Shown piece after piece: positions 7,858 to 26,640 of a stretch of DNA of 64,000 nucleotides. The stretch's first letter is position 1. Each line of letters opens with the position of its first letter. The translations under genes and the position numbers were made by a program. The notes beneath the pieces are model-generated. The model was given only the letters and a program-made list of their open reading frames with translations, ran no database searches and was not told the DNA's origin. Source of the DNA: Octopus sinensis (taxonomy: Eukaryota); contig NC_043023.1 of NCBI RefSeq assembly GCF_006345805.1, positions 3,472,001 to 3,536,000 on the forward strand. The letters are read 5' to 3'.

Positions 7858-7891
7858 TTATGCCACCAGTGCAGAAGCTGTGGAAGATTCA
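7858..7891 (-). CDS. rps13: rps13 exon 6, coding part (ESSTASALVA-stop)
   Basis: cttttccag|TGAATCTTCCACAGCTTCTGCACTGGTGGCATAA. 34 nt. Exon sum 23+49+79+170+101+34 = 456 nt = 151 aa plus stop. Confidence 0.97.
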
Positions 7892-9674
7892 CTGGAAAAG
7901 AAGAAAAGAAAAAATGTTTAAGCCAAGGTTGATGTTGGGGAGAATATACAAATAAAGTGTTAGGCAAGTATAAAATACAGACATTAGTAAAGACCGGCCG
8001 AGAAGAATACAGGCTTTAATCTTTTATTTCAGTCATTTGACAGTGGCCATGCTGGAGCACGAAGGGTTTTAGTTAAACAAATCGACCCCGGGATTTTTTT
8101 CTTTGGAAGCCTAGAACTTGTTCTATTGGAGTCTTTTGTTGAACCGCTAAGTTACAGGGGTATAAACACTAACACTGGTTTTCAAGCAGTAATAGGGGAC
8201 AAACACACATACATATATACAACAAGCTTTCTTTCGGCTTCTGTCAACCAAATCCACTCACAAGGCTTTGGTCAACTTGAGGCTATAGTAGAAGACACTT
8301 GCCCAAGTGGGGTTGAACCTGGAACCATGTGGTTGGGAAGTAAAAATGATTACCACACAGCCACACCTGCACTTTTATACACGATACCCAAACACATTAA
8401 AAAAATAACCTCCAAAAGAAATGCACAACAAAAGTTGATGAAGGCACCTCAGCTTCTATGCCTACATCATTTAACGTCTGCTTTCCATGCTAGCATGGGT
8501 TGGACGATTTGACTGAGGACTGGCGAACCAGATGGCTGCACCAGGCTCCAATCTGATCTGGCAGAGTTTCTACAGCTGGATGCCCTTCCTAATGCCAACC
8601 ACTCTGAGAGTGTAATGAGTGTCTATTTACATGCCACCAGCACAAGGGACAATCTAGCGGTACTGGCAACGGCTACATGTTTATATATACACATTTCTAT
8701 GTAACAATTTGATGTGCCTAACTGCATGAACATACCAGAACCAGAGTATGATTTAAACCATTGCACAGTGCATGCGATACTATAACTCTGTATTTTATTC
8801 ACATACGCTATAGGTGAAAGCTAGATATGGTCAATGTGAGGTTGCTCAAATAATTTGAACTCTTCATCCAGAACTAGGTCTGTGGCATCAAGAGTAGCTG
8901 TAAAAGACATCTAAAGCAGACTGATCAGAAATAATATATACTCTTTTACTTGTTTCAGTCATTTGACTGCGACCATGCTGGAGTACCGCCTTTAGTCGAG
9001 CAAATCGACCCCAGAACTTATTCTATCGGTCTCTTCTGCCGAACCGCTAAGTGACGGGGACGCAAACACACCAGCATTGGTTGTCAAGCAATGCTAGGGG
9101 GACAAACACAAACATATATATATATATATATATATACGACAGGCTTCTTTCAGTTTCCGTCTACCAAATCCACTCACAAGGCCTTGGTCGGCCCGCGGCT
9201 ATAGTAGAAGACACTTGCCCAAGATGCCACGCAGAGGGACTGAACCTGGAACCATATGGCTGGTAAGCAAGCTACTTACCACACAGCCACTCCTGCGCCT
9301 ATATATATCGACATACATTCTGAATATTTGTAGATACATGTTCTATCCGGGTCTATGTAAGCCAAGCCTAATTATGTTTATTGGTGTCACAGCCTCTATA
9401 TATTATATATTTATAATAGCAAAGGGTAAAATTAATTAATTAACTACTAATCAATAATTTCACCAAGTAGAATTCGGCATGAAAAAGGGCCAATTTTCAG
9501 TAAACGTAAGTAATATTTTATAATTAGGGTTCAGCAAAGATTTGCTTTACCACATACCGAAGTTTAGAAATAGCAGCTAGAGAACCTTAGGAAATAGCTA
9601 AGGTTCTCTGGCTGTTATTTCTAAACTTCAGTATGTGGTAAAGCAAATCTTTGCTGAACCCTAATTATAAAATA

Positions 9675-10029
9675 CTAGCAGTATCGCCCGGCGTTGCTTG
9701 GGTTTGTAAGGGAAATAACTATATAAGCATTTTTAGAGAGTTATAGCCAAAAAATGGGGAAAAAATTATGGTAATTTTTTTTTTTAGTTAAAAAGGTCGA
9801 GTTGCGTCCCCTAGACAGTCTGTGGTTTGTGTTTCTGATTCTCGACCCCATGTCGAATTTATCGATTTCTTTCAGAACTGAGGGAACTTTTCAAAATTTT
9901 CGCTGCGTTAGTTTTGAATTATGACATTGGGCTATGTGTGTGTCAAGTTTCATCAGAATCGGTTGAAAGCCGTGGTCAGGGTGAGGGTACAACCTGACAG
10001 ACAAACTGCCGTTTATATAGAGAGAGAGA
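9675..10029 (-). mobile_element. Non-autonomous Helitron-like element
   Basis: Minus strand starts A|TCTCTC... and ends with a GC-rich hairpin (cccaagcaacgccgggcg) then CTAG|T. Confidence 0.65.
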
Positions 10030-10063
10030 TATATAACCACTTCTAACATCCATACACACAGCC

Positions 10064-10142
10064 AGTACCTTCTCAGACATGAATTGGTCAACAAAGTTAT
10101 GTTCAGACATATGCTTGTCTATTTATCATCATTGTAGGCACC
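10064..10142 (-). ncRNA. SNORD27: Box C/D snoRNA, U27/SNORD27-like, copy A (rps13 intron 5)
   Basis: ggtgcct-ac-a-ATGATGA (C)...AGACAAGCATATGT-CTGA (D')...TTGTTGA (C')...CTGA (D)-ga-aggtact, with a terminal stem. The guide is complementary to 18S CAUAUGCUUGUCU, and the D'+5 rule gives A27 (human)/A28 (yeast). Confidence 0.9.
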
Positions 10143-11018
10143 ACCAAGTAAGACATACATCATCACTTAATGTTTGCTTTCTATGCTGGCATGGGTTGGA
10201 CAGTTTGACAGGAGCTGGCAATCCAGAGACTGCACCAAGCTTTACCGTTTTAGCATGGGGCTTACAGCTGGATGCCCATCCCAATCCCAACCACTTTATG
10301 GATCAGACTGGGTGCTTTTTACGTGGCACCAACAAACGAGAGTTCTAAAATAAAAACCTTGATTGGTCACCACCAAATAAACAGTCAAACTGACCCCACT
10401 GAATATAATGTACACTTACAACAACCACACTTGACGAAGATCCCCATATACACAAGTTGCTCAATCATACTCTCCCTTTTACTTGTTTCAGTCATTTGAC
10501 TGCGGCCATGCTGGAGCACTGCCTTTACTCGAGCAAATCGACCCCGGGACTTATTCTTTGTAAGCCCAGTACTTATTCTATCGGTCTCTTTTGCTGAACT
10601 GCTAAGTTACGGGTGCGTAAACACACCAGCATCGGTTGTCAAGCGATGTTGGGGGGACAAACAAAGACACACACACACACATACGACAGGCTTCTTTCAG
10701 TTTCCGTCTACCAAATCCACTCACATGGCTTCGGTCGGCCCGAGGCTATAGTAGAAGACACTTGCCCAAGATGTCACGCAGTGGGACTGAACCCGGAACC
10801 ATGCGGTTCGTAAGCAAGCTACTTACTACACAGCCACTGCGATCTTAGATATGATCACAAAAGGAGATAACATGCCTATAACCTTGAAGATCATCCAGTA
10901 ATCACTTAAACAGACATTCAATAGATACCATTAATTGATCCCGTATCATATTCAGAGAATACCCAACCACACAGCCAGCCCCTAACATGTATATAAAACA
11001 CCAATGGAAATGCTACCC

Positions 11019-11098
11019 AGTACCTTCTCAGATATGAATTAATCAGCAAAGCTTTATTCAGACATATGCTTGTCTATTTTATCATCATTGCAGGCACC
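11019..11098 (-). ncRNA. SNORD27: U27-like box C/D snoRNA, copy B
   Basis: Same C, D' and D boxes, identical 18S guide and intact terminal stem. Confidence 0.88.
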
Positions 11099-12690
11099 AC
11101 AGAGGAAGATGGTGTCTCAATCTCAATCTCTCTCCTGCATACATACGATATATACGTCAACACAGCCCACACAATAGCTAGACTCACCACCAAAATCTGA
11201 CTGCATTCAACTGAGAGAGTTTAAGCCAGCTCCTATTGAGATCACCATACCTATTTCTCTACTACCCACAAGGGGCTAAACACAGAGAGGACAAACAAGG
11301 ACAGACAAAGGGATTAAGTCGATTACATCGACCCCAGTGCGTAACTGGTACTTATTTAATCGACCCCAAAAGGACGAAAGGCAAAGCTGACCTCGGTGGA
11401 ATTTGAACTCAGAACATAGCAGCAAACGAAATACCTATTTCTTTACTACCCACTAGGGGCTAAACACAGAGGGGACAAACAAGGACAGACAAATGGATTA
11501 AGTCGATTACATCGACCTCAGTGCGTAACTGGTCCTTAATTTATCGACCCCGAAAGGACGATCAGCAAAGTCGACCACGGTGGAATTTGAATTCAGAACG
11601 TAACGGCAGACGAAATGTGGCTAAGCATTTCGCCTGGCGTGCTAACATTTCTCCAAGCTCACTATTGAATTCACCATGCCACGGGCTAAAGCAGTCCATG
11701 CACATCTGTCAGCAGCATGATGAAGCCATTCCAGATACCAGTGAGGAACACCAGACTTAAGCAACTGTATATGTCATGTGCAATGTCTTCAGCTGACCAC
11801 CTCTCCACCTATGCCAACCCAGGGGAGGATCTGGTGCTATTGCCTTCCTCAAACCCCAACCCATGACCTCATTGCGATGGGAAGGTTAAACGATTAAGTG
11901 CCAGAGATATGCTGCAACCCGGGTAATGGCAAAATTCAGGCACTGTTCGTTCTGGAATCTGGTGGCTTGCTAATAATGGTGATGAACCACCTCTGCAGGA
12001 ATCCTGAGACAAGGTATAACACCTGGATGACCTGCCACCAGCCGTATACAGTGGCCTAGGAATACAGGCAAGAGCTGTTTGCAGAGACTGTAATCATCCC
12101 TTGAAACTCCTATGAACTCACTCAATACACCCAGAACATCAAAATCCTCATTCTATGTCCACATCTCCACAGCACCATGGATCAAACAGAATTTGTTGAG
12201 GAGAATTCTCTATGGTTAGATACCTTTCCAGCCACCAACTTTCACCTGTCCACAAATAAATAATTCACTCACAATGGCTGGACACATTTTCCACAGAAAC
12301 CCAACAACATTGCTTGTATGGCAATGATGATGTCCATTTGTAATTATCAGATGTCATATCAAGAATACAGGAACACACAGGTGTATGCACGGTTGCTCAG
12401 AGACAGTTCAATCCCCAACCACGTGGTTCTAAGTCCACAACCCAACTGCACAGCACCTTGGGCAACTGTCTACAATAGCACTAGGTTGACCAGTACTTTG
12501 CAAGTGAATTTAGGATGTAGATATGTGGCAATGTGTGTGCGGGCCTGTGTGCTTCTCCCACCACTTGACCACCGGTGTTAGTATATTGCAGTAAAACCCT
12601 CCACGGCAGTGTCCCTAGCCTGCTGATGGTTCAACGACAGTAACAAGGCAAAAGGTTTACATATACAAATGCTGCACAGCTTTTCTATCC

Positions 12691-12769
12691 AGTACCTTCT
12701 CAGACATGAATTGGTCAGCAAAACTATATTCAGACATATGCTTGTCTATCTATCATCATTGTAGGTACC
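12691..12769 (-). ncRNA. SNORD27: U27-like box C/D snoRNA, copy C
   Basis: Same boxes and guide. Terminal stem ggtacct/aggtact. Confidence 0.88.
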
Positions 12770-13339
12770 ATCATAGATCAAAATACTACTCCACGAGGAA
12801 GTTACAGTCCACTTAATACTCACACAATCCACAGAGCTCTTCTATACTATGCAGCTAAAGGATCCTTTATAGCTAGATACGCTTCCACCTGTCTCCAAAT
12901 AAATAATTCACTCACAGTGGCCGGACACGTTTTCCACAGAAAACCAACAACATTACTTGTATGGTAATGATGATGTCCACTCGTAATTATAATATAGGAA
13001 TCTTCCAACACACACACAGGTGTATGCACGGTTGCACAGAGATAGTTCAAGCCCCACCATGTGGTTCTAAGTCCACCTGAAACTGCATGACACCTTGGGC
13101 AAGTGTCTACAATAGCACTGGGTTGACCAGTACTTTGCAAGTGAATTTAGGAGATAGAAACTGTGTAGAAGTGTGGCAATGTGTGTGCGGGCCTGTGTGC
13201 TTCCCCCACCACTTGACCACTGGGGTTAGTATATTGCAGTAAAACCCTCCAAGGCAGTGTCTCTAGCCTGCTGATGGTTCAACGACAGTAACAAGGCAAA
13301 AAAGTTTACATATACAAATGCCGCACAGCTTTTCTATCC

Positions 13340-13418
13340 AGTACCTTCTCAGACATGAATTGGTCAGCAAAACTATATTCAGACATATGCTTGTCTATTT
13401 ATCATCATTGTAGGTACC
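13340..13418 (-). ncRNA. SNORD27: U27-like box C/D snoRNA, copy D
   Basis: Same boxes and guide. Part of a ~650-bp tandem duplication with copy C. Confidence 0.88.
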
Positions 13419-14590
13419 GTCATAGGTCAAAATACTACTCCACGGGGAAGTTGCAGTCCACTTAATACTCACACAATCCACAGAGCTCTTCTATACTATG
13501 TAGCTAACAAGCTGACAGTGGTTGCCCGTCTTGGTATGAAGTACAGTGCAGCCAATTGTCACTACACAAAGACCATAGCATGAACCATACCTTTGCCAAC
13601 TGTTTTAACCCTTTAGTGTTCGCATTATACTACCAAAATTAATCCTTTTTTATCCACATTGCTTTGAACTAATCATGCATTATCTTGTAACTATGAGATT
13701 ATGACGAGGTAGCCGTTAATTTTTAAAACGATATTGTAGGGTTAGTGTGAGAGACCAGATCTGGCCAGTTTGAACATAAAACGGGCAGAATACTTCTGGC
13801 CGGTTTAAATGACTCTGCACTCTGACATCTCTTGACCTCCACCCAACCTCAAGGACATGATAACGCAAAGAAGAGTGGACTACAGCAACACTCAGCCAGT
13901 GTTCATTTACAACAGAATAGATAGGAGCAATATAAAAGGACATGCCTTGCACAAAGAAACAAAGTGTGCAACTCTACACTAATCATTAACTGTTTCACCA
14001 CTAAGTTTTTGTTGAAATACACTGCAATAATTAGTAAAACAACAAGCAATTATTTAAGCCTTTCGTTACTGTATTTATTTTGAGATGTTCTGTGTTTCTT
14101 TTAATTACTTTAAATATAACAAAGAATTTAAGTAAAACAACCTAGTTATCATTCAGCTAGTGTCAGGATCATTAATTGTGATTCACCCTTTCGTTACTGC
14201 ATTTATTTTGAGAGGCTCTGTGTTTCCTTCAATTAATTTTGAATATAACAAAGAATTTAGTAAAGTAACTTAGTTATCATTAAGCTAGTGTTAGGAACAT
14301 AAATTGTGACTAAGGTTTGGTGGAAGATTTTAATTCAAAACTTATGAAAACAAGACATGTGTACAACAGAGCCGGTTTCAGCCAGGCAGGTAACAAAAGG
14401 GTTAAGGCTTGGTGGGAGATTTTAATTTAAAACTTATGGAAACAAGACATTTGTATTACAGAACCAGAGGTGGTTTCAGCCAGGTTGGTATCAAAAGGGT
14501 TAAGCTGATATCAGAGAATACCCAACCACACAGCCGGCCCCTAACATGTATATAAAACACCAACGGTTACACCAACAGTTACACACTGGG

Positions 14591-14664
14591 GTCTCAGATA
14601 TGAATTAATCAGCAAAGCTTTATTCAGACATATGCTTGTCTATTTTATCATCATTGCAGGCACC
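14591..14664 (-). ncRNA. SNORD27: U27-like box C/D snoRNA, copy E (3' terminal stem lost)
   Basis: Boxes and guide are intact, but the sequence after box D is gaccccagtgtg instead of gaaggtact. Flanks are shared with copy B. Confidence 0.7.
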
Positions 14665-15508
14665 ACACAGGAAGATGGTGTCTCAATCTCTCTCTCTCTC
14701 TCCTGCATACATACACACATCAACTCAGCCCACAAAATAGCTAGACTCACCACCAAAATCTTCTGACTGCATTCAACTGAGAGAGTTTAACCCAGCCCCT
14801 ATTGAGTTCACCATACCTATTTCTTTACTACCCACAAGGGGATAAACACAGAGAGGACAAACAAGGACAGACAAATGGATTAAGTCAATTAAGATGAAGT
14901 TTTGACAAAAAGCTTCAATTTAAATTAACTCTAAACCAGGCACCTTATGACCTTTGAGGGTCCATTTAAGATTTTGTTGTATTTGCAATAAATTGGTCAG
15001 GCTTCTACAATACACAGAATACTTTCAATTTTTGTATAAAATTCCTAAGATTTAATTATAAAAATACAGGATTTTCTTGAATGGCTAAGAGGGTCCATCT
15101 GAGTAAAAAAGGAATTGAAGGCTACTCTTTTACACTCACTGGACTGCAACCACTGCTTTGAATAGGTCTTACATTTTTTCTTATTTTGCTTGAAATCTGG
15201 TACTTATTTATCAGTATCTTTTGCTGAACTGCCGTAGAGGAGGAGCAACAAACAGGCACACATCCACACCCTATGGGCTTCCACTCAGTTTCCACCGACC
15301 TAATACACTCACAAGGAATTGGGTCAGCCTGGGGTTATTCAAACTAAAACCATGTAGTTACAAGGCAAGCTTCTTATCCAGAGATCCACACCTGCACCCT
15401 TATGTATTTCCAAACATGAACCATCCCAAGGAAAACCAACTACCCTGATCGATTATCTTCTAAAACCAGGCCCAGGCATAAATCCACCCCTGCAGTGTAT
15501 GACTCTCC

Positions 15509-15587
15509 AGTACCTTCTCAGACGTGAATTGATCAACAAAGCCAAGTTCAGACATATGCTTGTCTATTTATCATCATTGTAGGCACC
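15509..15587 (-). ncRNA. SNORD27: U27-like box C/D snoRNA, copy F
   Basis: Same boxes, guide and terminal stem, in flanks unrelated to the other copies. Confidence 0.88.
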
Positions 15588-16069
15588 AACCAAAACACAG
15601 CTCTATGGAACAACACAACAGAACCACGTTCTGTGCATCATATTCAAAGAGATCTAAACTCCACATCAAAGATTCACACGCCAACACCATACATAGATTA
15701 ATTATAGGATTCAACAGAACTTAGGTACATCAACACGTAGAATGCCAGAAAAGGCTACATACAATAACACAGGGTTCACAATGAAGTAAAACCTTGCTTC
15801 CCAACCATGCGGTTTCAGATTCCGTCCCACTGGGTTGCAGCCCTTTTATCTTGCACCTACCCTGTTGTAAATGAACACCAGCTGAGTGCTGGTGTAGTCC
15901 CATCTTCTTTGAGTAGTCATCTCTTAGAGGTAGGTTGAGGTTGGGTGGAGGTCAAGAGATGTCTGAGTGCAGAGTAATTTAAAACAGTTGGGTTCATGTA
16001 TGGTCTTTGTGAAGTGACAAATGGCTTTCCACTATAGACTCAAGCTGAACACACAAAAGCACATGTATA

Positions 16070-16269
16070 CAGTCATGGCCAGAAGTTTGGAACATAGGTC
16101 TGAATTGTTTTTTTAACTATCAAATGCTCAATGTTATATTTAATATTTAACTGACCACTGGATCAATTGTTAGGCAACTATATCTCTACGCTGTATATTT
16201 GAATTGGATTGTACTTGGGCATAATTTCAATTTTTAAAAAAAACTGTTCCAAACCTTTGGCCATGACTG
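16070..16269. mobile_element. Tc1-type MITE, 200 bp
   Basis: TIRs CAGTCATGGCCAGAAGTTTGGAACA / TGTTCCAAACCTTTGGCCATGACTG with TA on both sides. Confidence 0.85.
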
Positions 16270-17127
16270 TACACACATTTATTTTTATCCCTTGTTTCCA
16301 GTCATCAGGCTGCAGCTATGTCAGGACACACCCTTGAAGAATTCCTCATCCAAACAGATTGACCCCCACCAGTACCTAATCTATTGCTATTTTTTTTTTA
16401 CAGAATTGCTAAGTCACAGGAACATAAACAAATCAACAGTTTGCCAAATGATGAAACTGCTTGTTTGACACAGATGCTCATTTACAACCATCACATAATG
16501 CTGGAACAAGGACACATACAACAGGTTTCAATTTCTCCCAACCCAACCCAATCCACTCACAAGACTAGTCCACAGTGCCACAGTGGGACTGAGCTCAGAA
16601 TCACATAACCAAATCTGCATCAATGTACACCTACACATCTTCAAACACAACAAACTCAGTGTCGAAAATGCTGCAGTAGTCATGGACAATACCCCAACCC
16701 CATAAACACAAAGTTACCCACCCTCTTTTCTTATTTCTTTATTGCTTACAAGGGGCTAAACATAGAGGGGACAAACAAAGGGATTAAGTCGATTACATCA
16801 GCCCCAGTGCATAACTGGTACTTAATTTATCAACCCCAAAAGGATGAAAGGCAAAGTTGACCTCGGCAGAATTTGAACTCAAAACTTAGCGGCAGGCGAA
16901 ATACCGCTAAGCCTTTCGTCCGGCATGCTAACGATTCTGCCAGCTCGCCTGCCTTCTTTTCTACAGTACAAAAACAGCACCGAACCAAACAACTGTTGAC
17001 AACACAAGTTGACACCTGAAATACTCTTTGCTCACAAATGCAACAAACTACACCACCAGTCGCACCACCTGACACTGGGAGTAATACTAGTATCGGTAGT
17101 TGTAGTAGTAGTAGCAGAAATACTCAC

Positions 17128-17234
<107 letters not shown>

Positions 17235-17980
17235 TCAAAGAAAGAGTAAAATATAATACATTGACAAATGAGAGCATAACCCTGTGGCCTATGCCAGGGG
17301 TGTAACCAGCCCACTTATGCGCACCTTTTCCTTCATTGGACACTAAATCCTGCTTGCGAAGACCTGTTGAGGCAAGTGAAATTGATATCAAATTCGATGA
17401 CTGGCATCCGTGCTAGTGGGGCACAAAGAGCATCATCCAAGCGTGATCGTTGCCAGAGCGGCTAACTGGCTTCCATGCTGGTGGCAAGTAAAAGGCATCA
17501 TTCCAGTGTGATCGTTACCAGCGTCATTTTACTGGCACATGAAAAAACATTCAAGCAAGGTTGTTACCAGTACTGCCTGACAGGCACCCGTACCGGTGGC
17601 ACATAAAAGCACCCACTACACTCTCGGAGTGGTTGGCATTAGGAAGGGCATCCAGCTGTAGAAACTCTGCCAGATCAAGTTTGGAGCCTGGTTCAGCCAT
17701 CTAATTCGCCAGTCCTCAGTCAAATCGTCCAACCCATGCTATCATGGAAAGCAGATGTTAAACGATGATGAAGCAAGGCCAGCAGTTTTGACAGGAGTGG
17801 GGAGTAAATTAGATCAACTCCGAAAGGTGAAATTGACCCTGGTGGAATTTGAACTTGGAATGCAAAGCTGGATCAAATGCTCAGTATGCCAACACTGTTA
17901 CCAGTTGGCCACTTTATATAACACATTTTCTAATCCTGGCACAATGCCAGCTATTTCAGGGGAGGAGGCAAGTCAATTAA

Positions 17981-18200
17981 CCCTTTAGTGTTCACATTAT
18001 TCTGCCAAAATTAATCCTTTTTCATCTACATTGTTTTGAACTAATCTTGCATTATCTTGTAGCTATGAGATTTTGATGAGGTAGCTGTTAATTTTTAAAA
18101 CGACATTGTAGGGTTGGTGTGAGAGACCAGATCTGGCCAGTTTGAACATAAACAGGTAGAATACTTTTGGCCGGATATGGCCGGTTTAAATGCTAAAGAG
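17981..18200. mobile_element. piggyBac-like MITE (TTAA)
   Basis: TTAA-ccctttag...ctaaagag-TTAA. Same family as 27426-27647 and ~13607-13810. Confidence 0.7.
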
Positions 18201-18730
18201 TTAAATCAATCCCAATGTTCAACAGGTTCTTATTTTATCAGTCCCAAAAGGATGAAAGGCAAATTTGAACTCGGAACATAAAGCTAGATAAAATGTTGCT
18301 AAGCATACTAATGTGTCTGCCTTAACTTGCTGAGAAATATTGCTTTCGTATTTTGGTAGAAGGCCGGCAATTTCAGGAGAGAAATGCTCAACTGGCATTT
18401 ATTTTACAGACCCCCAAAAGGATGAAAGCTAAGTTGACCTCGGTGGTATTTGAACCTGGAACATAAAGCTGAACAAAATGCAGCCAATGACTTTGCCCAG
18501 TGCGCTTCCAAAATACCATGAGAATTTTTATTCCTTAACCATTGACTAGTGATACCTGATCAGTATACACTACCCATTTTGGGTTCAAACCAACCAGATC
18601 AGGCTTCTCACACCTACAGTATGTCATTCTAAAAATAATGTCAAAATCTTGCATCCACAAGATAAATTCAAAACAATGTGAGTAAATAAGCACCACATTA
18701 GACAGAGTAATCTGAATGCTAAAGGGTTAA

Positions 18731-19273
18731 CCCTTTCGTTACTATATTTCTGACCAAAATACACCCCTTATGTGTTTCAATTAATTTTTAACGTAATCAT
18801 AAATTTAGTCTGGTTTCATTAAACAACTATAACTTTTTTATTTATCAATATATTAATATGATTTTTGGAAGATAATTTAATGAAATGTCCTCAACCAATT
18901 CTATACTATAATTTTTGTCACAAAGTGACTAATTGCAGGTAGATACAGGTAAATACAACAAAATATAAAATTATTAAAATTTTTGTTCAAACATCGCTAT
19001 AGAAAATGGGTTATTAGCTAATGAAATTCGTATCCATTTTTTGTCAGAATTACAAATTTTGAAAACACAATAGGAACAAATTTTGGAAAAAAATCTCCCA
19101 AAATTCACGGAATTAAAATTACACTTCGATCGTTGTACAAAACTGTATATGAACTGTTTACGAAGTATAATCACGTGTTTTCACGAATGTACTAAAGAGA
19201 TTTGCTCTGATATTCTCATTTAAATATGAATAGGTAAATACGGGCGGTTTTGGGCGGCTTGGTAACGAAAGGG
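18731..19273. mobile_element. piggyBac-like non-autonomous element
   Basis: Perfect 12-bp TIRs ccctttcgttac/gtaacgaaaggg flanked by TTAA. Confidence 0.8.
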
Positions 19274-19320
19274 TTAAACAGACAGGATGGTCACAGCCGG
19301 AACACCTTTGATCATGCCTA

Positions 19321-19560
<240 letters not shown>

Positions 19561-20986
19561 CTATTTAAGACACAAGGCTTGGAATTTGGGGGGAGGGGGA
19601 CTAGTCGATTATATCGACCCAAGAAATTCAATGGTACTTAATTCATCAACTCCGAAAGGATGAAAGCCAAAGTTGACCATGGTGGAATTTGAACTCAGAA
19701 TATAGTGACAGGCGATTCGGCCAACTTGCCACCTTAATAATAACGATCCTGACTACTATAGGCACATGGCCCGAAATTTTAGGGGAGGGGGCGCTAGTTG
19801 ATTACATTGACCCCCAAAAGACGAAAGGCAAAGTAGACCTTGGTGGAATTTGAACTCAGAAATGTAGAGACAGGCAAAATGCTACTAGCATTTTGTCCAG
19901 TGTGCTAATGATTCTGCCAGCTTCCTGCCTTGGGTAATACGACAATTATTAAAGGTACAAGAGAAGAGGTTGTGCTGTGGTTAAGTGAAAATCAATAAAA
20001 ATCGCTGGGTTCCAAAACATAAGGAGTTGACCTGTTCGACTAAGGCCTTCGTGGTGGTGCCCCTAGACGGCAACAAACCAACTTAAACAAGTAAATGATA
20101 AGAGGTCATCCAATGAAACTGGTCTACAAGAGCTTCTTGTGCAACAAAGGCAAAGATGATCTCTCTTTCAACTACTTAGAATTAGCTACCTTGCATACCC
20201 TCTTCACCTTGATGCCCTCTCTGTCCCACCAGGGACCTGGATCAAATACAAACAGCTAGTCATCCACCTCAGATAAAAATATCAATACATTTTGAGAACC
20301 AACGAGGATTTATCTCCCCACAAGTGATATAAACGGGTGTATTCTGCACCAAAAGCCAATATGATAGGTTCTCTCATAGTACTTACTTGTAACAAAACAC
20401 ATTTTAAGTGGGGATAAACATTCTCTCAAGTTATCTCCCGCAGTACAACCTGTCCTGACAGAACAGCCACTTTAAGTAGGGGTACTTCTCAGTATTAAAA
20501 CTACATATATACTATTAACTCACTGGCTAATCACAACATTAGCACCTGTTCTGGCACATTCTATATATCGCTGGCAGGGAGATGAATCACCACTGTCTCT
20601 AGCGGTCAAGAATCCACCATTGGCGAGTCCAAGGAAGGCCAAGATTCCGTGATCTGGTGATTTGGGCATTGGAGATGGTGGGGATGTCTCCCTGTTAGCA
20701 ATATAAACCAGAGTGCATTTCTCTCATGGAATCTACTGCAGTATAGCTTGTTCTAACAGAACACATTTAAGTGGGAATAAACATCACCTCTCGATGTGTG
20801 CATGTATAAATAAGGGTGAAGAACACCTGTAGGTTCACAATGTATATTATTTATTGAATCTTTGAAGAATTACAGATAGGAGATTCCATGTTTTTTGCTA
20901 GATGTACATACCTTTGTAACTTGTAATGCCTACAATTAAAACTATACGAAATTTTTTCAGACTTCTGTTTTGATAAATATACTTAC

Positions 20987-21065
20987 CAATTTTGGACGGC
21001 GTCAAACCCTTCTTGGCAAGTTTATAGATCTGTTCCTTAACATCATCTGATGACAGTTTCAACCA
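20987..21065 (-). CDS. rps13: rps13 exon 3 (WLKLSSDDVKEQIYKLAKKGLTPSKI)
   Basis: tttccacag|TGGTTGAAACTG...AAAATTG|gtaagt. 79 nt. Confidence 0.97.
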
Positions 21066-23178
21066 CTGTGGAAACAAACATTAAAGATAAGCAATAACAG
21101 TCGCATACGGATGACAAGCTTAAATGTACAACAATGATATTGTAACTATTCCATGCAATAAAATATCCAGGTGACATTATGACGACCATTTAATGCGCAC
21201 GTTTCTATCCTTGCTTGGGTCAAATGGAATTCATCAAAGCAAATTCTCTAAGGTCAAACAACACTTTGTCTCTCTACAAAAGTTCATTAAGAGATTCTCA
21301 CCTCTCTTCCCCACCACACATCAGAAGCATAGAACAAATGAGTTTACATCCTAATTTCACCCACAGCTAGGCTTTGCAATACTTAAATTTATTATTAAGT
21401 CCTTCATTTAATGCTGTGCACTATATCATCATCTTTGTTTAGCATCCGCTTTCCATGCTAGCATGGGTTGGACAGTGGACGGTGCAACTGGGGTCTGGGA
21501 AGCCGGAAGGCTGCACCAGGCCCAGTCTGATCTGGCAATGTTTCTACGGCTGGATGTCCTTCCTAACGCCAACCATTCCGTGAGTGTAGTGGGTGCTTTT
21601 TACGTGCCAGACGAGGCTGGCAAATGGCCACGATCGGATGGTGCTTTTTACGTGCCACCGGCACGGGGGCCTGGCGAGGCTGGCAACGGCCACATACGGA
21701 TGGTGCTTTTTACGTGTCATGTTCGGATGGTTCTCTTACATACCACCAGCACTGATATCACAGCTGCAAATTTCCATTGATGTTGATCGATTTTGATTTT
21801 CACTTGCCTCAACAGGTCTTCACAAGTAGAGTTTTGTATCCCAAGAAGGAAAGGTATGCATAAGTGGACTGGCTACATCCCATGTAGAGGCCACGGGTTA
21901 TGGTCTCACTTGTCCTGCCGGGTCTTCTCACGCACAGCATAGTATATATATATATATTTTATCATCCCGCCACCTCACTGCATCTAAAGCTTATCTTTAC
22001 TATTAGTGGGAAAGTCTCTAATCATATTCTTCCATTAATAAAAATTTTGATGAAGGTTGTTCCTTGTATACGACCCTAGGAGACAGCAGCATTGGGAAGT
22101 CGGTACCAAACTTAAAACAAACAAAAAAGTACTGGCATTAATTTGACTAAAGCCTTCAAAACAGTGCCCCAACATGGCCACAGTCTGAAGCAAGCTCTTT
22201 TAATATCAATAACTCAGTAATGAGTTTCAAGTCTAGCCACTCAAACCGTGATCAATGTTGAATGACAGGGACACTCCTGATCCCCTAATGACTCACTCAA
22301 CTAGGGAGGACAGCCAAAGGGATTTCTAAGCTACTATGCTCTATAGACAAAGTATCAACTACCCATACAACAAATTTTCAATTATCAAAATTATCTCTAC
22401 CCCTACACTAGGGGTCGGGGAACTTTAACCGATTACCCCCAATCGAGGGGGTACATCAGTGTAAATAAATATATATTGGGGGTAATCGGTCAAAGTTCCC
22501 CGGCCCCTAGTCTAGGGGTAGAGATACTCTCTTTTACTTGTTTCAGTCATTTGACTGCGGCCATGCTGGAGCACCACCTTTCATCAAGCAAATCAACCCC
22601 GGGACTTATTCTTTGTAAGCCCAGTACTTATTCTATCGGTCTCTTTTGCCGGACTGCTAAGTGACGGGGACGTGTAAACACACCAGCATTGGTTGTCAAG
22701 CAATACTAGAGGGACAAACACAAACACACATATATATATATATACAACAGGCTTCTTTCCGTCTACCAAATCCACTCACAAGGCATTGGTCAGCCCGGGG
22801 CTATAGCAGAAGACACTTGCCCAAGATGTTACACAGTGGGACTGAACCCGGAACCAATTTGTTGTATGGTACTTGATACTTTATCTATAGAGCATAATTT
22901 GGAAGAAAAAATATAAACTCTTTGAATTCAAAAGGTCTGTTGAATCTATTACAAATATAGAAAGTATAAAATGCAATAAGCTTTGAAAAGGCAGCCTTCT
23001 TGTTTTGCTTTCTGTCTCCAATATAAAAAAAGCTTTTACTTATGTCTAATGAGTCATTACCCGCAAGAATTTCATTTTTACCCCAGTTCGGCAACTCCTG
23101 CTCTAGAGAATGTATCCTAATTACCAAACAATAATTAAGACCAGAGTCCACTAACGAGCAACTGCAATTAATGAGCAA

Positions 23179-23249
23179 GTCATTCAGAAAACTAAGCTCA
23201 ACACAATATTTCAGAGAGCTGGGGTTAGTTTCAATGACATCATAATGAC
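23179..23249 (-). ncRNA. Box C/D snoRNA guiding the 28S C equivalent to yeast Cm2948 (snR69-like), intron 2 copy
   Basis: gtcat-t-ATGATGT (C)...AACTAACCCCAGCTCT-CTGA (D')...GTGTTGA (C')...CTGA (D)-atgac. The guide pairs with 28S GAGCUGGGUUUAG at 12 of 13 positions, and D'+5 gives the C of GAGC. Confidence 0.78.
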
Positions 23250-24811
23250 CTGAACATTAACATCACCTATTTTTTCACTACACACAAGGGGCTAAACAAG
23301 GAGAAACGAATTTAACCGATTACATCGACCCCAGTGCATAACCGGTCCTTAATTCATCAACCCCAAAAGGATGAAAGGCAAAGTTGACCTCGGCAGAATT
23401 TGAACTCAGAACGTAGCGGCAGATGAAATACCTATTTCTTTATTACCCACAAGGGGCTAAACAAGGACAGACATAGGTATTAAGTCAATTACATCGACCC
23501 CAGTGTGTAACTGGTACTTAATTTATCGACCTCGAAAGGATGAAAGGCAAAGACGACCTCGGCAGAATTTGAACTCACAACGTAACGCAGACGAAATACC
23601 GCTAAGCATTTCACCCGGCGTGCTAACGTTTCTGCCAGCTCACCGCCTTTACATCACCCCACACTACATTTCCAGCAAAACAAAATCCATTATCAGCGTA
23701 AAGTTATGGCTGTGTGAATTAACCCTTTCTTTACCAACCCACCTGTAGGCACCCAATTGGAATTTCACTATGTAAACAATTGAGTTACACTGGTGGTCCT
23801 TAACTATTTTTTTACCTGTGGACTTCTTTGGCTACTAATCTATTCTGGCGGACTCCCATAGCCACACAATATTTGAAAACTAGTTTTATAGGCGCAGGAG
23901 TGGCTGTGTGGTAAGTAGCTTGTTTACCAACCACATGGTTCCGGGTTCAGTCCCACTGCGTGGCACCTTAGGCAAGTGTCTTCTACTATAGCCTCGGGCC
24001 GACCAAAGCCTTGTGAGTGGATTTGGTAGACGGAAATTGAAAGAAGCCCGTCGTATATATGTATATGTGTCTGTGTTTGTCCCTCTAGCATTGCTTGACA
24101 TCCGATGCTGGTGTGTTTATGTCCCCGTTACTTAGCGGTTCGGCAAAAGAGACCGATAGAATAAGTACTGGGCTTACAAAAGAATATGTCCCGGGGTCGA
24201 GTTGCTCGATTAAAGGCGGTGCTCCAGCATGGCCGCAGCCAAATGACTGAAACGTGTAAAAGAGTAAAGATATTCCTCTCAAAATTTCTATTTTGCTTTT
24301 CATACAAACTTTTGTAGGTTGGCAATAGTAATTGTCTGAAAGAACAGGCTTCAGTGGCTAGAAACATGAAACTATGTAAAACAGAAAGGAACTTTTCCTT
24401 TAGATGTAGTGATTGCCAGAAAAGCAACCAATAAATCTAAAGCAAAAGTTTCTTTCACAGACCCTTAAAATACCAGTGTATCCCAAATTTGCTAATTAGC
24501 TCGTGTGGATCCCCTAGAAGTCACATAGACTGGTTGAGAATTACTGAGTTATACCAACATTATTTTACATATCTGGGCATTGAATTTTTGGATATTTTTT
24601 TTCCTCCCCAATTTTTACCACTTCAATTTTCTGAAATGTTGCACTACGGATGACAACTGGATAATCAGCTTCATGTTGTCAAGTAGCAAATTTGACTTCA
24701 AAGTTCTTTTGAAAGATATATAGAAGACCTGTCCAAGGTGTCACGTAACGGGACTGAACCACACAGGTATGTCTATCAACAAGTAAAAGATAATCCACTG
24801 TGTATACTTAC

Positions 24812-24860
24812 TGTTGGCACTGAACGACGGTATGGTAGCGCTGATTGGGATATACCCTTT
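24812..24860 (-). CDS. rps13: rps13 exon 2 (KGISQSALPYRRSVPT)
   Basis: ctctctgcag|AAAGGGTATATCC...GTGCCAACA|gtaagt. 49 nt, phase-compatible with exons 1 and 3. Confidence 0.97.
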
Positions 24861-24998
24861 CTGCAGAGAGAGAGAGAGAAAACATTATTATTATTATTAT
24901 TATTACTACAAAACCTGGTATAGCAACAGCATAACCCATTCAAACACTTTCTGCTCACAAGTTTCTATTCTCAACCAAAACTCTGCTAGAAAGACTAT

Positions 24999-25208
24999 TG
25001 GCCCAGTGGTTAGGGCAGCGGACTCGCGGTCGTAGAATCGCGGTTTCGATTCCCAGACCGGGCGCTGGTCCCTGCTGTACTCTTTCTTCTGTTGGCCTGC
25101 TCGCTTAGCCAGCAGGGTGGCGCCATTCGAATGCTAAAAAACAATGCGAACGCATTGTGACCAGCGATGTGTAACTACATCTGATGGACTGGTCGGTTAC
25201 GTGATATC
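24999..25208 (+). mobile_element. tRNA-Arg-like SINE (also 38290-38600, 56190-56456 minus, 60445-60745, 62345-62650)
   Basis: tggcccagtggttagggcagcggactcgcgg...ggtttcgattccc head. Present only in duplication unit 1, so it inserted after the duplication. Confidence 0.75.
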
Positions 25209-25421
25209 TAGATGGCGGTGCCCCAGCATGGCCACAGCTCATGAGCTGAAACTAGATAAAATAAATAATATTCTGAGTGTAGTTGCTGCTATTTCTAGCT
25301 ATAATCTTCATTTAACCCTTTGTCTTTTAAACCAGCTAGATGTGGCCCCTCACACCTATGCTACAATGTTATTCTAAAAAAATAAGCAATAGCATTATCA
25401 AAATCTAAGAGAAACAAGGCA

Positions 25422-25502
25422 GTCATTCAGAAAAACTATACTCGTCAGGAGTAAAAAGATTACTCAGAGAGCTGGGGTTAGTTTCAATAACATCATAATG
25501 AC
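25422..25502 (-). ncRNA. snR69-like box C/D snoRNA, intron 1 copy 1
   Basis: Same C box, guide, D' box and gtcat/atgac stem. C' candidate CTGACGA. Confidence 0.78.
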
Positions 25503-25682
25503 TTAGGATAGGAACAGATAGATAGAATATGCAGTGCTACTTGGGTGTGATCTACAACTTAAAAGGCGATTACTTTTCAATTTCTAAAAGCCCTCAAGAC
25601 TTTAACGGTGCAAAAGCCATGGCTGCCAAACTCATCAGTTTATCCTCACTGGAAATGTTTTCTCTATTATGCTGATTTCATC

Positions 25683-25965
25683 ATCATCATCATTTAACGT
25701 CCGCTTTCCATGCTAGCATGGGTTGGACGGTTCAACTGGTCTGTGAAGCCAGAAGGCTGCTTCAGGCCCAGTCTGATCTGGCAGTGTTTCTACGGCTGGA
25801 TGCCCTTCCTGACGCCAACCACTCCGAGAGTGTAGTGGGTGCTTTTTACGTGCCAGACGGAGGTGGCAGGCGGCCACGGACGGATGGTGCTTTTTACGTG
25901 CCACCGGCACAGGGGCCAGACGAGGCTGGCAACGGCCACGAACGGATAGTGCTTTTTACATGCCA
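25683..25965 (-). mobile_element. Third SINE-like family with (GAT)n tail (also 8468-8690, 17290-17770 plus, 21430-21945, 26853-27340, 37955-38200, 48070-48245, 55080-55345)
   Basis: Conserved ...gagtggttggcgttaggaagggcatccagc...ttaaacgatgatgatg. Confidence 0.75.
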
Positions 25966-26171
25966 TTGCTACTTTTCGGTGTCAAATTTTAGAATTTTTT
26001 TTCTTGTATTATTCAAGATACATCACTTAACTGTGATTGGTTCAACAGGTATCGTGAAATTTACTCATATGGTTTCCTTTAACTGAATGGAAAAAATAGT
26101 AGGAACTTTAAGAGCCTGTGCAAATTGATGAAGTTCAGTCTGCAAGATGCCAAAAATACAACTGAAGCAGT

Positions 26172-26332
26172 ATGCTGCAAGGAGACCATGTCCCTGATTC
26201 AAATGATAGTGAAGCTGAAGTAGAAGACAACGGAAACCAAGGAAGATGCATCAATGGACTCTGGGCCTTTGGACTGAAGAACGGTGGAAATTGTCGCTAT
26301 TTTTATGTAGAAAAAAATGAAATCCTAAAACA
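26172..26332 (+). mobile_element. Merlin/IS1595-like transposase fragment at a duplication junction
   Basis: Translates QGDHV...NQGRCINGLWAFGLKNGGNCRYFYVEK, resembling the Merlin/ISXO2 motif GxxVxIDE...NRGR....WVFG....R.F.V..R (recognised by eye). Confidence 0.55.
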
Positions 26333-26356
26333 CTGATTGGGATATATACCCTTTCT
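26333..26356 (-). pseudogene. Partial duplicate of rps13 exon 2 with intact acceptor
   Basis: ctctctgcag|AAAGGGTATATATCCCAATCAG: the first 20 nt of exon 2 with a 2-nt TA insertion, then unrelated sequence. Confidence 0.85.
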
Positions 26357-26640
26357 GCAGAGAGAGAGAGAGAGAGAGAACATTATTATTATTGCTACAA
26401 ACAGCAGCATAACCCATTCAAACACTTTCTGGTCACAAAAGATTCTATCCTCAACCAAAATTCAAAACTCTGCAAGAAAAGCTATTATATTCTGAGTGTA
26501 GTTGCTGCTATTTCTAGCTACAATCTTCATTTAACCCTTTATCTTTTAAACCAGCTAGACCTGGCCCCTCACACCTATGCTACAATGTTATTCTAAAAGA
26601 ATAAGCAATCACATCATCAAAATCTAAGAGAAACAAGGCA

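What the first reader, a model, noticed from the sequence alone, without database searches (positions are those of the whole stretch)
10064..15587. Six U27/SNORD27-like snoRNA genes arrayed inside one rps13 intron
Seen in sequence: six ~79-nt copies (10064, 11019, 12691, 13340, 14591, 15509), all sense to rps13 and all in the 9.2-kb intron 5. Box C (ATGATGA), the guide AGACAAGCATATGT, D' and D are invariant, while spacers and flanks diverge. Copies A and F share no visible flank with the others, B/E share ~300 bp, and C/D share ~650 bp. This pattern points to several rounds of duplication with purifying selection on the snoRNA itself. Established: the guide matches the 18S 5' end and the D'+5 rule gives human Am27/yeast Am28 (U27/snR74). 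Vertebrate intronic snoRNAs are normally one per intron and released by debranching and exonucleolytic trimming. Inference: six copies in one intron need either endonucleolytic processing of a polycistronic intron or hidden splicing that isolates each copy. Either would be an unusual snoRNA expression system for a mollusc.
Basis: partly seen in the sequence, partly recalled or inferred. Interest (0 to 1): 0.85.

Follow-up and report, generated by a model that had tools for sequence, protein, structure and literature searches.

The report
Six U27 snoRNA genes, one intron
An octopus ribosomal-protein gene (rps13) carries six conserved copies of the small RNA that guides methylation of 18S rRNA A28 inside a single 9.2-kb intron; this layout is real and shared with other cephalopods, but it is a known type of snoRNA gene organisation, not a new one.

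Summary
Six about 80-nt box C/D units lie on the minus strand, sense to rps13, all inside its 9,236-nt intron 5 (window 7892-17127). Box C, a 14-nt guide, D' and D are identical in all six.

- **Target:** the guide pairs perfectly over 13 nt with the genome's own 18S and places A28 (human A27) at the methylation position.
- **Family:** SNORD27 is the best Rfam match for all six copies, at 35-43 bits, below the curated cut-off of 52.
- **Copy number:** the genome holds only these six plus one 5'-truncated, poly(A)-tailed retrocopy.
- **Selection:** no variable position falls in a functional element (P about 8e-5). In both recent duplicate pairs the cores are 99-100% identical and the flanks 87-88%.
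- **Other species:** Argonauta and Sepia rps13 also hold several U27 copies, two or three per last intron. Oyster, mussel, snail and annelid rps13 hold none.
- **Second family:** another C/D family has three copies in octopus intron 1.

I found no sequence sign of hidden or recursive splicing in the octopus intron. The likeliest mechanism is a polycistronic intron processed with internal cuts; this is inferred and needs RNA data. Intronic snoRNA clusters are already known from rice and Drosophila, so this is a new member of a known kind.

The parts
10058..10146 (-). U27-like box C/D snoRNA copy A, the 3'-most in the transcript, 2,172 nt upstream of the 3' splice site. Box C starts at 10132 and box D ends at 10073. 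The external stem is intact.
   Evidence: SNORD27 43.0 bits; R1 112.7 bits; stem -11.9 kcal/mol
11013..11102 (-). U27-like copy B, the recent paralogue of E. One extra A after box C. The external stem is intact.
   Evidence: (41.9 bits)
12685..12773 (-). U27-like copy C, tandem-duplicate partner of D with a period of about 649 bp.
   Evidence: (39.2 bits)
13334..13422 (-). U27-like copy D, tandem-duplicate partner of C.
   Evidence: (42.1 bits)
14579..14668 (-). U27-like copy E. From box C to box D it is identical to B, but the 3' half of the external stem has been replaced (duplex -5.9 against -10 to -12.6 kcal/mol), so it may be impaired.
   Evidence: 35.3 bits; 95.5 bits, stem pairs broken
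15503..15591 (-). U27-like copy F, the 5'-most in the transcript, 1,540 nt downstream of the 5' splice site. It is the copy most similar to the retrocopy on contig C2.
   Evidence: (42.9 bits)
7892..17127 (-). rps13 intron 5 (GT...AG, 9,236 nt), holding all six copies plus SINE- and MITE-like repeats.
17128..17228 (-). rps13 exon 5.
7858..7891 (-). Coding part of rps13 exon 6 (last exon, ending at the stop codon). An AATAAA signal follows at about 7820-7825.
10952..11325 (-). Segment duplicated with 14511-14891 (the B/E duplication). Flanks are about 87% identical and the snoRNA core 100%.
12239..13507 (-). Tandem duplication of two units of about 640 bp, carrying C and D. Flanks are about 88% identical and the core 98.7%.
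7858..31101 (-). Host gene rps13 (uS15), coding part. Exons: 31101-31079, 24860-24812, 21065-20987, 19523-19354, 17228-17128, 7891-7858. A pyrimidine-rich (TOP-like) tract lies upstream of the ATG.

Best explanation
**What it is.** The six units are paralogous genes for the cephalopod orthologue of box C/D snoRNA U27 (SNORD27 in human, snR74 in yeast). They sit in sense in the last intron of the ribosomal-protein gene rps13 of an Octopus genome. The species is probably O. sinensis, judged from assembly size and an exact protein match.

**What each copy does.** Each copy has box C, a guide that forms 13 contiguous Watson-Crick pairs with the genome's own 18S nt 25-37, then D', C' and D. This directs fibrillarin to 2'-O-methylate 18S A28 (human A27). 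There is no credible second target. Five of the six also have an 8-9-bp external stem.

**How the copies arose.** They arose by local duplication. Four old lineages (A, B/E, C/D, F) have unrecognisable flanks. Two younger duplications (C/D tandem, B/E) have flanks that differ at about 12-13% of aligned positions, gaps included. Transposon insertions have since inflated the intron. All six cores have stayed under purifying selection.

**How it most likely works (inferred).** The copies have no promoter of their own and are transcribed as part of the rps13 pre-mRNA. They lie 2.2-7.6 kb from the 3' splice site, far outside the short distance that favours splicing-coupled assembly, so snoRNPs probably assemble through the external stems independently of the splice site. 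The units are then freed from the excised intron, or from the pre-mRNA, by exonucleases stopped at each snoRNP. At least five internal cuts in the spacers would also be needed, so the intron would behave as a polycistronic snoRNA precursor, as in plant and Drosophila intronic clusters.

**Shown:** identity, target, copy number, position, selection and conservation in other cephalopods. **Inferred:** co-transcription, stem-assisted assembly and endonucleolytic separation.
For: **Identity and target**
- Six exact guide matches, none expected by chance.
- SNORD27 is the best Rfam family for all six, E = 4e-5 to 3e-3.
- The guide's best site in the genome's own rDNA unit is 12/12 at 18S A28; the next best is 9/12. 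The box-D-side guide has no outstanding target.

**Position in the gene**
- Exon map with GT-AG borders and a full 151-aa translation.
- Distances to the splice sites.

**Copy number**
- Genome-wide there are only these six plus one truncated retrocopy.
- That retrocopy runs from the guide to CTGAGA and then straight into poly(A). It is closest to copy F. This suggests an F-like RNA once existed with a free 3' end just after box D.

**Selection**
- 14 variable columns in the 66-column core, none in the 29 functional columns; hypergeometric P = 7.9e-5.
- C/D core 78/79 identical against flank 88.1% (P = 0.0015). B/E core 71/71 against flank 87.1% (P = 0.00035).

**External stem**
- Present in 11 of 12 intact cephalopod copies.
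- 6 of 8 pairs show changes on both sides. Covariation score 0.40 against 0.19 in shuffles (0 of 500 reach it) and at most 0.13 when partners are slid.

**Conservation**
- Argonauta hians has three intact copies in intron 5 and one broken copy in intron 4.
- Sepia pharaonis has two copies 150 nt apart in a 503-nt intron 5 and one in intron 4.

**Other checks**
- No shared upstream or downstream motif among the independent lineages, so no sign of own promoters.
- A second C/D family shows the same habit, with three copies in octopus intron 1 and three in Argonauta intron 2.
- Precedent for the organisation: PMC2780460 and PMC11028025.
Against: - No RNA data were available. Expression of any copy, the methylation of A28 and the cleavages are all untested.
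- Rfam scores (35-43 bits) are below the SNORD27 gathering score of 52.
- Copy E lacks a good external stem. One Argonauta copy is clearly a pseudogene, split by an insertion with box C and guide mutated. Not every copy need be productive.
- No endonuclease signal, such as a conserved hairpin in the spacers, was found. The only strong hairpin in the intron is a dispersed MITE-like palindrome.
- My splice-site scan is crude and cannot exclude weak or non-consensus internal exons.
- The retrocopy could predate the present arrangement.
Confidence: 0.58

Rival explanations
1. Hidden splicing. Unannotated internal exons, or zero-length recursive splice sites, divide intron 5 so that each snoRNA is removed in its own lariat and matures by the ordinary one-per-intron route.
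For: Unannotated alternative splicing is known to change which snoRNAs share an intron (PMC4234469). Sepia intron 5 has a recursive-site-like ttttccag|GTAAGA about 20-30 nt after its first copy. Five candidate acceptor-donor pairs exist in the octopus intron.
Against: - The octopus intron has no AG|GTRAG recursive motif and only one poor loose match.
- Five candidate exons is fewer than the 8.2 expected from shuffles. Three of them come from a repeated SINE-like element. Three of the five inter-copy spacers have none.
- No acceptor lies at a shared distance downstream of the copies, and no motif is shared downstream.
- Apart from exons, snoRNAs and repeats, nothing in intron 5 is conserved with Argonauta or Sepia.
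- The Sepia spacer is only about 150 nt.
Confidence: 0.15
2. sno-lncRNA outcome. The intron is processed only by exonucleases, which stop at the outermost snoRNPs. The main product would be a stable RNA of about 5.5 kb bounded by F and A, or shorter versions, with the inner copies staying embedded. Free snoRNA would come from few copies.
For: Two or more snoRNAs in one intron is the stated prerequisite for sno-lncRNAs, including one from a ribosomal-protein gene, RPL13A (PMC4234469, PMC11028025). No endonuclease signal was found in the spacers.
Against: The retrocopy resembling F, the 5'-most copy, ends right after box D. This suggests a free 3' end downstream of F. The inner copies B-E keep guide and boxes under selection, which is simplest if they act as free snoRNPs, although embedded snoRNPs would also conserve them. 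The literature found here describes this class mainly in mammals.
Confidence: 0.15
3. Mostly redundant or decaying copies. Only one or two copies yield functional snoRNA, and the rest are recent by-products of local duplication on their way to becoming pseudogenes.
For: Copy E has lost half of its external stem. Argonauta has a copy split by an insertion, with mutated box C and guide. Within-species copies resemble each other more than they resemble copies in other species, so turnover is ongoing.
Against: The four old lineages have lost all flank similarity, yet they keep every functional column. Both young pairs have cores significantly more conserved than their flanks. Spacer differences persist, so wholesale gene conversion does not explain the pattern.
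Confidence: 0.1
4. Artefact, mobile element or independently transcribed genes. The copies would be an assembly duplication, part of a dispersed repeat, or units with their own promoters.
For: None beyond the general risk with repeats. The intron is rich in SINE- and MITE-like repeats.
Against: - Each copy has its own flanks and diagnostic bases, and the youngest pairs have flanks that differ at about 12-13% of aligned positions.
- Independent assemblies of Argonauta and Sepia show the same multi-copy layout.
- Only 6 + 1 copies exist in 2.7 Gb.
- No upstream motif is shared.
Confidence: 0.02

Closest known systems
Human SNORD27 (U27), Rfam RF00086
   Same: Box C/D layout, a guide upstream of D' with the core GACAAGCAUAUGUCUGA, the same target (18S A27 in human, A28 here), about 70-nt size, intronic and sense to a host gene.
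   Different: From my own knowledge, human U27 is a single gene in an intron of the non-coding host SNHG1, one snoRNA per intron. Here there are six copies in one intron of a protein-coding gene. The Rfam score is below the gathering cut-off (35-43 against 52).
Yeast snR74 in the snR72-snR78 polycistronic unit
   Same: From my own knowledge, it is the functional homologue (18S Am28) and is released from a multi-snoRNA precursor by endonucleolytic cuts (Rnt1, an RNase III) followed by exonuclease trimming. That is the kind of processing inferred here.
   Different: The yeast unit is an independent, non-intronic transcript with seven different snoRNAs. Here there are six copies of one snoRNA inside a spliceosomal intron, and no RNase III-type hairpins were seen in the spacers.
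Intronic snoRNA gene clusters of rice and Drosophila melanogaster
   Same: Several snoRNA genes within one intron of a host gene, arising by local duplication. [quoted passage not shown]
   Different: Not reported for molluscs in the papers I could search. Here the cluster is homotypic (six copies of one guide), sits in a long, repeat-filled intron, and is conserved as a multi-copy state across octopods and a cuttlefish.
sno-lncRNAs (Prader-Willi region; mouse RPL13A SNORD33-SNORD34)
   Same: The prerequisite is met: two or more C/D snoRNAs in one intron, and in one known case the host is also a ribosomal-protein gene (PMC4234469).
   Different: No RNA evidence here. There are six units rather than two, with spacers of 0.6-1.6 kb. 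The retrocopy hints that at least an F-like unit is released as a small RNA.
Vertebrate RPS13 as a snoRNA host
   Same: The same host gene, a ribosomal-protein gene with a TOP-like leader, carries box C/D snoRNAs in its introns.
   Different: From my own knowledge, vertebrate RPS13 hosts U14 (SNORD14), one per intron. No U14-like match was found here. The rps13 loci of oyster, unionid mussel, the snail Gigantopelta and the annelid Owenia have no U27-like unit, so the U27-rps13 association looks specific to cephalopods.

Membership tests
SNORD27 / U27 / snR74 (box C/D snoRNA guiding 18S Am27/28) | Box C (RUGAUGA) near the 5' end, box D (CUGA) near the 3' end, internal D' and C', terminal stem | tested here: met
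   AUGAUGA, D' CUGA and D CUGA are invariant in all six. C' is UGCUGA or UGUUGA. An 8-9-bp external stem is present in five of six.
SNORD27 / U27 / snR74 (box C/D snoRNA guiding 18S Am27/28) | The antisense element upstream of D' pairs with the 5' end of 18S so that A27 (human) / A28 (yeast) is the fifth paired nucleotide from D' | tested here: met
   Own 18S 5' end: TACCTGGTTGATCCTGCCAGTAGTCATATGCTTGTCTC. There are 13 contiguous Watson-Crick pairs and position 5 is A28. It is the single best site in a 12-kb rDNA unit, 12/12 against a next best of 9/12.
SNORD27 / U27 / snR74 (box C/D snoRNA guiding 18S Am27/28) | Score at or above the Rfam RF00086 gathering threshold (52 bits) | tested here: not met
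   35.3-43.0 bits. Nothing was reported at gathering level. SNORD27 is still the top family for every copy, with E = 4e-5 to 3e-3 in an 8-kb search. The seed is largely vertebrate, so a shortfall in a mollusc is expected.
SNORD27 / U27 / snR74 (box C/D snoRNA guiding 18S Am27/28) | A stable RNA of about 70-80 nt is expressed and 18S A28 is 2'-O-methylated | not testable with these tools
   No RNA-seq or RiboMeth-seq data are available. The only indirect hint is the poly(A)-tailed retrocopy ending after box D.
Intronic snoRNA gene cluster (rice / Drosophila type) | Two or more snoRNA genes, sense, between two consecutive exons of the host | tested here: met
   All six lie between exon 5 (17228-17128) and exon 6 (7891-) on the minus strand. 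The same holds for Argonauta (three copies) and Sepia (two copies).
Intronic snoRNA gene cluster (rice / Drosophila type) | No exon between the snoRNA genes, so they leave in one intron | tested here: inconclusive
   The sequence scan finds fewer exon-like acceptor-donor pairs than chance and none in three of five spacers. There is no recursive motif and no conserved non-repeat block. Transcript data are needed.
sno-lncRNA | Two snoRNAs in one intron (the prerequisite) | tested here: met
   Six copies in one intron. The prerequisite is stated in PMC4234469.
sno-lncRNA | Accumulation of a non-polyadenylated RNA with snoRNA ends | not testable with these tools
   No RNA data.
Recursive (zero-length-exon) splicing | A pyrimidine tract followed by AG|GTRAGT, juxtaposed inside the intron and between the copies | tested here: not met
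   There is no AGGTRAG in octopus intron 5, and one weak AGGTGA with a poor pyrimidine tract. A single good motif exists in Sepia intron 5.
Dispersed repeat / snoRNA-derived mobile element | Many copies scattered over the genome | tested here: not met
   Searches of the 2.72-Gb genome with the Rfam model and with two patterns return the six intronic copies and one truncated retrocopy. The other one-mismatch hits lack boxes.

The most novel reading that the evidence does not exclude
Coleoid cephalopods may routinely mature many snoRNAs from a single spliceosomal intron. In octopus rps13 that would be six U27 copies in intron 5 and three copies of a second guide in intron 1. Sepia has two U27 copies 150 nt apart. 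This would require a splicing-independent, endonuclease-dependent pathway of the plant or yeast kind, which is not characterised in animals beyond Drosophila clusters. The same introns might also yield snoRNP-capped long RNAs. The multi-copy state would then have been kept since before octopods and decapodiforms split.
Probability: 0.3. Interest if true: 0.55.

Novelty: new member of a known kind. Interest (0 to 1): 0.35.

Why it matters
- **A tractable test case.** The six copies can be told apart by a few diagnostic bases. With public or new small-RNA and long-read data, one could ask directly how an animal cell separates several snoRNPs that share one intron: by internal cleavage, by hidden splicing, or not at all (sno-lncRNA).
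- **A lineage-specific host.** The U27-rps13 association was seen in all three cephalopods sampled and in none of the four other lophotrochozoans. That is useful for tracing how snoRNAs move between host genes.
- **Annotation.** No paper devoted to cephalopod snoRNAs was among those my search listed. The ten units found in this one gene are a starting point.
- **Limits.** The layout is not a new principle. The target, the RNA class and the organisation type are all known.

Tried and rejected
- **Rfam at gathering thresholds** found nothing in the window. The copies appear only with E-value thresholds.
- **U14 or another known snoRNA in introns 1-4:** no credible Rfam hit, only low-complexity miRNA-like noise.
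- **A second target for the box-D-side guide:** no outstanding match in the rDNA unit, and the element differs between copies and species.
- **Internal exons and recursive sites:** no support in octopus.
- **Own promoters or shared processing motifs:** no 8-mer is shared among independent lineages within 200 nt on either side.
- **The strong 80-bp hairpin at 9511-9677** as a possible RNase III entry site: it is a dispersed palindromic repeat with at least 40 loci, so it is ordinary.
A cluster look-up gave usable ids instead.
- **The Pomacea locus** was not on record.
- **The first whole-genome search for 18S** by Rfam family failed, and a 39-nt 18S pattern missed because octopus 18S differs. 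A shorter pattern worked.
- **The chromosome-1 '18S' locus** turned out to be a partial rDNA copy, so I used a complete unit on contig C11589.
- **Two Logan transcript contigs of a decapodiform rps13** (L040, L041) carry only extra sequence upstream of the coding region, which I took for retained upstream intron. They say nothing about intron 5.
- **The key Drosophila paper** (PMC1370813) is not held.

Full report

Yes. The 14-nt guide AGACAAGCATATGT occurs six times, always on the minus strand. Shuffled sequence gives 0.9 matches even when two mismatches are allowed. Aligning the six units with their flanks shows an invariant box C (ATGATGA), guide, D' (CTGA) and D (CTGA). The spacer after D', parts of C' and the stretch before box D vary.

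tblastn with a ribosomal protein S13 sequence, followed by inspection of the borders, gives six minus-strand exons with GT-AG introns. These exons translate to a complete 151-aa protein. Intron 5 runs from window 17127 down to 7892 (9,236 nt) and contains all six units in sense. In transcript order they are F, E, D, C, B, A. F lies 1,540 nt from the 5' splice site and A lies 2,172 nt from the 3' splice site.

The protein is identical to the S13 of Octopus sinensis, O. bimaculoides and Argonauta hians. The assembly has 2.72 Gb in 13,516 contigs. I therefore take the source to be an Octopus, probably O. sinensis; this is an inference.

**2. What are the units?**

- **Rfam.** Nothing is reported at gathering thresholds. 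With E-value thresholds, SNORD27 (RF00086) is the best family for every copy: 35.3-43.0 bits against a cut-off of 52, with E = 4e-5 to 3e-3. The Tetrahymena U27 counterpart comes second.
- **Target on the genome's own rRNA.** I recovered the genome's own 18S 5' end and a full rDNA unit. The guide forms 13 contiguous Watson-Crick pairs with 18S nt 25-37. The fifth pair from D' falls on A28, because octopus 18S has the yeast-like extra U; this is human A27. It is the single best site in 12 kb of rDNA, 12/12 against 9/12 for the runner-up.
- **Second guide.** The stretch before box D has no outstanding rRNA match and is not conserved between copies or species. The RNA looks like a single-guide snoRNA.
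- **External stem.** Five copies have an 8-9-bp stem outside boxes C and D (-10 to -12.6 kcal/mol). Copy E has lost the 3' half (-5.9).
- **Stem covariation.** Across 13 cephalopod copies, 88% of cells in the stem are paired and six of eight pairs show changes on both sides. The covariation score is 0.40, against 0.19 in shuffles (0 of 500 reach it) and at most 0.13 when partners are slid. The caveat is that this alignment was fitted to the model.

**3. Not a dispersed repeat, and not an artefact.**

A whole-genome search with the Rfam model and two pattern searches return the six intronic copies and one further locus on contig C2. The remaining one-mismatch hits have no boxes.

The C2 locus starts within the guide, so box C is missing. 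It runs to CTGAGA and continues directly into a run of A. It differs from copy F at three positions and from copy A at six, by my own count on the sequences printed. It looks like a 5'-truncated retrocopy of a processed, F-like RNA. That is indirect evidence that such an RNA once existed with a free 3' end just after box D.

Each copy has its own flanks. The youngest pairs have flanks that differ at about 12-13% of aligned positions, gaps included, so assembly duplication is not a reasonable explanation.

**4. Duplication history and selection.**

Self-comparison of the intron shows that A and F match the other copies only over the 81-93-nt unit. B and E share about 375-386 bp. C and D are a tandem duplication of about 620-632 bp with a period of about 649 bp. 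The rest of the intron is filled with SINE-like repeats and a MITE-like palindrome.

Two tests point to purifying selection:

- Among five copies there are 14 variable columns in the 66-column core. None falls in the 29 columns of box C, guide, D' and D (hypergeometric P = 7.9e-5).
- In both young pairs the core is far better conserved than the flanks:

| Pair | Core identity | Flank identity | Fisher P |
|---|---|---|---|
| C/D | 78/79 | 88.1% | 0.0015 |
| B/E | 71/71 | 87.1% | 0.00035 |

Lineage-specific differences persist in the spacer, so blanket gene conversion does not explain the pattern.

**5. Relatives.**

The rps13 loci of two other cephalopods could be fetched and searched with a covariance model built from the six copies.

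- **Argonauta hians.** Three intact copies lie in intron 5. A fourth in intron 4 is split by an insertion of about 145 nt and has a mutated box C and guide, so it is a pseudogene.
- **Sepia pharaonis.** Two copies lie only about 150 nt apart in a 503-nt intron 5, and one lies in intron 4.
- **Turnover.** Copies within a species tend to resemble each other, which suggests ongoing turnover. Octopus A and the 3'-most Argonauta copy look orthologous.
- **Non-cephalopods.** The rps13 loci of Ostrea edulis, Sinanodonta woodiana, Gigantopelta aegis and the annelid Owenia fusiformis contain no U27-like unit.

The association of U27 with rps13, and its multi-copy state, therefore appear to be a cephalopod trait that predates the split between octopods and decapodiforms.

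**6. A second family behaves the same way.**

Comparing the whole octopus gene with the Argonauta and Sepia loci shows that, outside exons and repeats, the conserved blocks are snoRNAs. Besides U27 there is another box C/D unit with the guide AACUAACCCCAGCUCU followed by CUGA. Three copies lie in octopus intron 1 (28825-28907, 26641-26723, 25422-25504) and one in intron 2 (23179-23251). Argonauta has three in intron 2 and Sepia has one in intron 1.

Its best rDNA match is 28S GAGC*UGGGUUUAG in the peptidyl-transferase region, 11/12 pairs. No Rfam family rises above noise. Several snoRNAs per intron is therefore a general habit of this gene.

**7. How are six units in one intron expressed?**

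This cannot be shown without RNA data. The sequence evidence is as follows.

- **Own promoters.** There is no shared upstream motif that would suggest them.
- **Hidden exons.** A simple acceptor-donor scan finds five candidate internal exons against 8.2 expected from shuffles. Three of them belong to a repeat, and three of the five spacers have none.
- **Recursive splicing.** No AG|GTRAG motif exists in the octopus intron. One good motif exists in Sepia.
- **Distance from the 3' splice site.** The copies lie 2-7.6 kb from it. From my own knowledge, splicing-coupled C/D snoRNP assembly favours a position some tens of nucleotides upstream of the branch point, and units placed elsewhere depend on extended terminal stems. 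The conserved, covarying external stems fit that second mode.
- **Need for internal cuts.** Exonucleases working in from the intron ends can free only the outer ends. Separating six snoRNPs needs at least five internal cuts. Without them, snoRNP-capped long RNAs (sno-lncRNAs) should accumulate, as described for mammalian introns holding two snoRNAs (PMC11028025, PMC4234469).
- **The retrocopy.** Its end after box D, in an F-like copy, favours real separation, but only weakly.

I therefore rank a polycistronic intron with endonucleolytic separation first. Hidden splicing and sno-lncRNA formation follow, and then the view that most copies are unproductive.

**8. Comparison with what is known.**

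- The RNA class, the target and the guide are those of U27/SNORD27/snR74.
- From my own knowledge, yeast snR74 itself is made from a polycistronic precursor cut by an RNase III.
- The literature search found no paper devoted to cephalopod snoRNAs among those listed.

The finding is therefore a new member of a known kind. It is a well-defined, conserved, homotypic intronic cluster in a lineage where snoRNA biogenesis is unexplored, and it is not a new expression system.

**9. Verdict.**

Interest is moderate (0.35). The locus is a clean natural test case for how animal cells resolve multi-snoRNA introns, and it adds ten unannotated snoRNA genes in one octopus gene. The principle, however, is already known, and the mechanistic claim still rests on inference.

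Noticed in passing
window 23179-23251 (intron 2); 25422-25504, 26641-26723 and 28825-28907 (intron 1), minus strand; also L031 about 6289, 7521, 8365 and L032 about 4205: A second multi-copy box C/D snoRNA family in the same rps13 gene: box C AUGAUGU, guide AACUAACCCCAGCUCU followed by CUGA, terminal stem GUCAUU/AAUGAC. Its best rDNA match is 28S GAGC*UGGGUUUAG in the peptidyl-transferase region (11/12 pairs). By my own count this corresponds to the yeast C2948 site. No Rfam family matches. The copy at 26641-26723 has D' CCGA. One further exact guide match lies on contig C4 (36586414).
   Followed up: partly
L012 1483-1563 (G000 contig C2, about 79851161): A 5'-truncated retrocopy of a U27 unit most like copy F. 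It starts within the guide, ends at CTGAGA and runs straight into a run of A. It hints that an F-like snoRNA with a mature 3' end was once reverse-transcribed in the germ line.
   Followed up: partly
G000, at least 47 places on most chromosomes (e.g. L037 C1:15749932, L038 C1:16588615, L042 C1:53944000-): The 5' end of 18S rRNA is scattered over the genome. Some copies are short fragments of 110-250 nt in unrelated sequence, and one is flanked by an inverted repeat. The chromosome-1 locus L042 holds only a partial 18S. The 28S peptidyl-transferase region is likewise found at 20 or more places. These may be dispersed rDNA fragments or an rDNA-derived mobile element.
   Followed up: no
window 9511-9677 (intron 5, between copy A and exon 6): A near-perfect hairpin of about 80 bp (-123 kcal/mol, z = -22.7) gives weak miRNA-family hits on both strands. 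It is a dispersed palindromic (MITE-like) repeat with at least 40 scored loci in the genome, including another in this window region (C27:3518520, window about 46520).
   Followed up: yes
L032 8285-8298 (Sepia pharaonis rps13 intron 5): A recursive-splice-site-like motif, ttttccag|GTAAGA, lies 20-30 nt downstream of the first U27 copy and upstream of the second. No such motif exists in the octopus intron.
   Followed up: partly
L031 12442-12662 and 14062-14098 (Argonauta hians rps13): The intron-4 U27 copy is a pseudogene: box C is AUGACGA, the guide is mutated, and the body is split by an insertion of about 145 nt that looked SINE-like to me. About 160 nt into intron 5 there is a duplicate of the last roughly 28 nt of exon 5 plus its donor site, so one local duplication included the exon end.
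   Followed up: partly
window 8000-20000, e.g. 11247-11616, 16717-16900, 19533-19716, 8943-9291, 10476-10838: Introns 4 and 5 are packed with copies of a few SINE-like repeat families. Some carry acceptor-like tttgtcccctctatgtttag sequences that create the few exon-like signals in the intron.
   Followed up: partly
L036 3875-4034 and 4774-4932 (Owenia fusiformis rps13): Two weak SNORD15-like matches (31-35 bits, below the cut-off of 75) lie inside the annelid's rps13 gene span (I did not map its exons). This suggests that rps13 hosts different snoRNAs in different lophotrochozoans.
   Followed up: no
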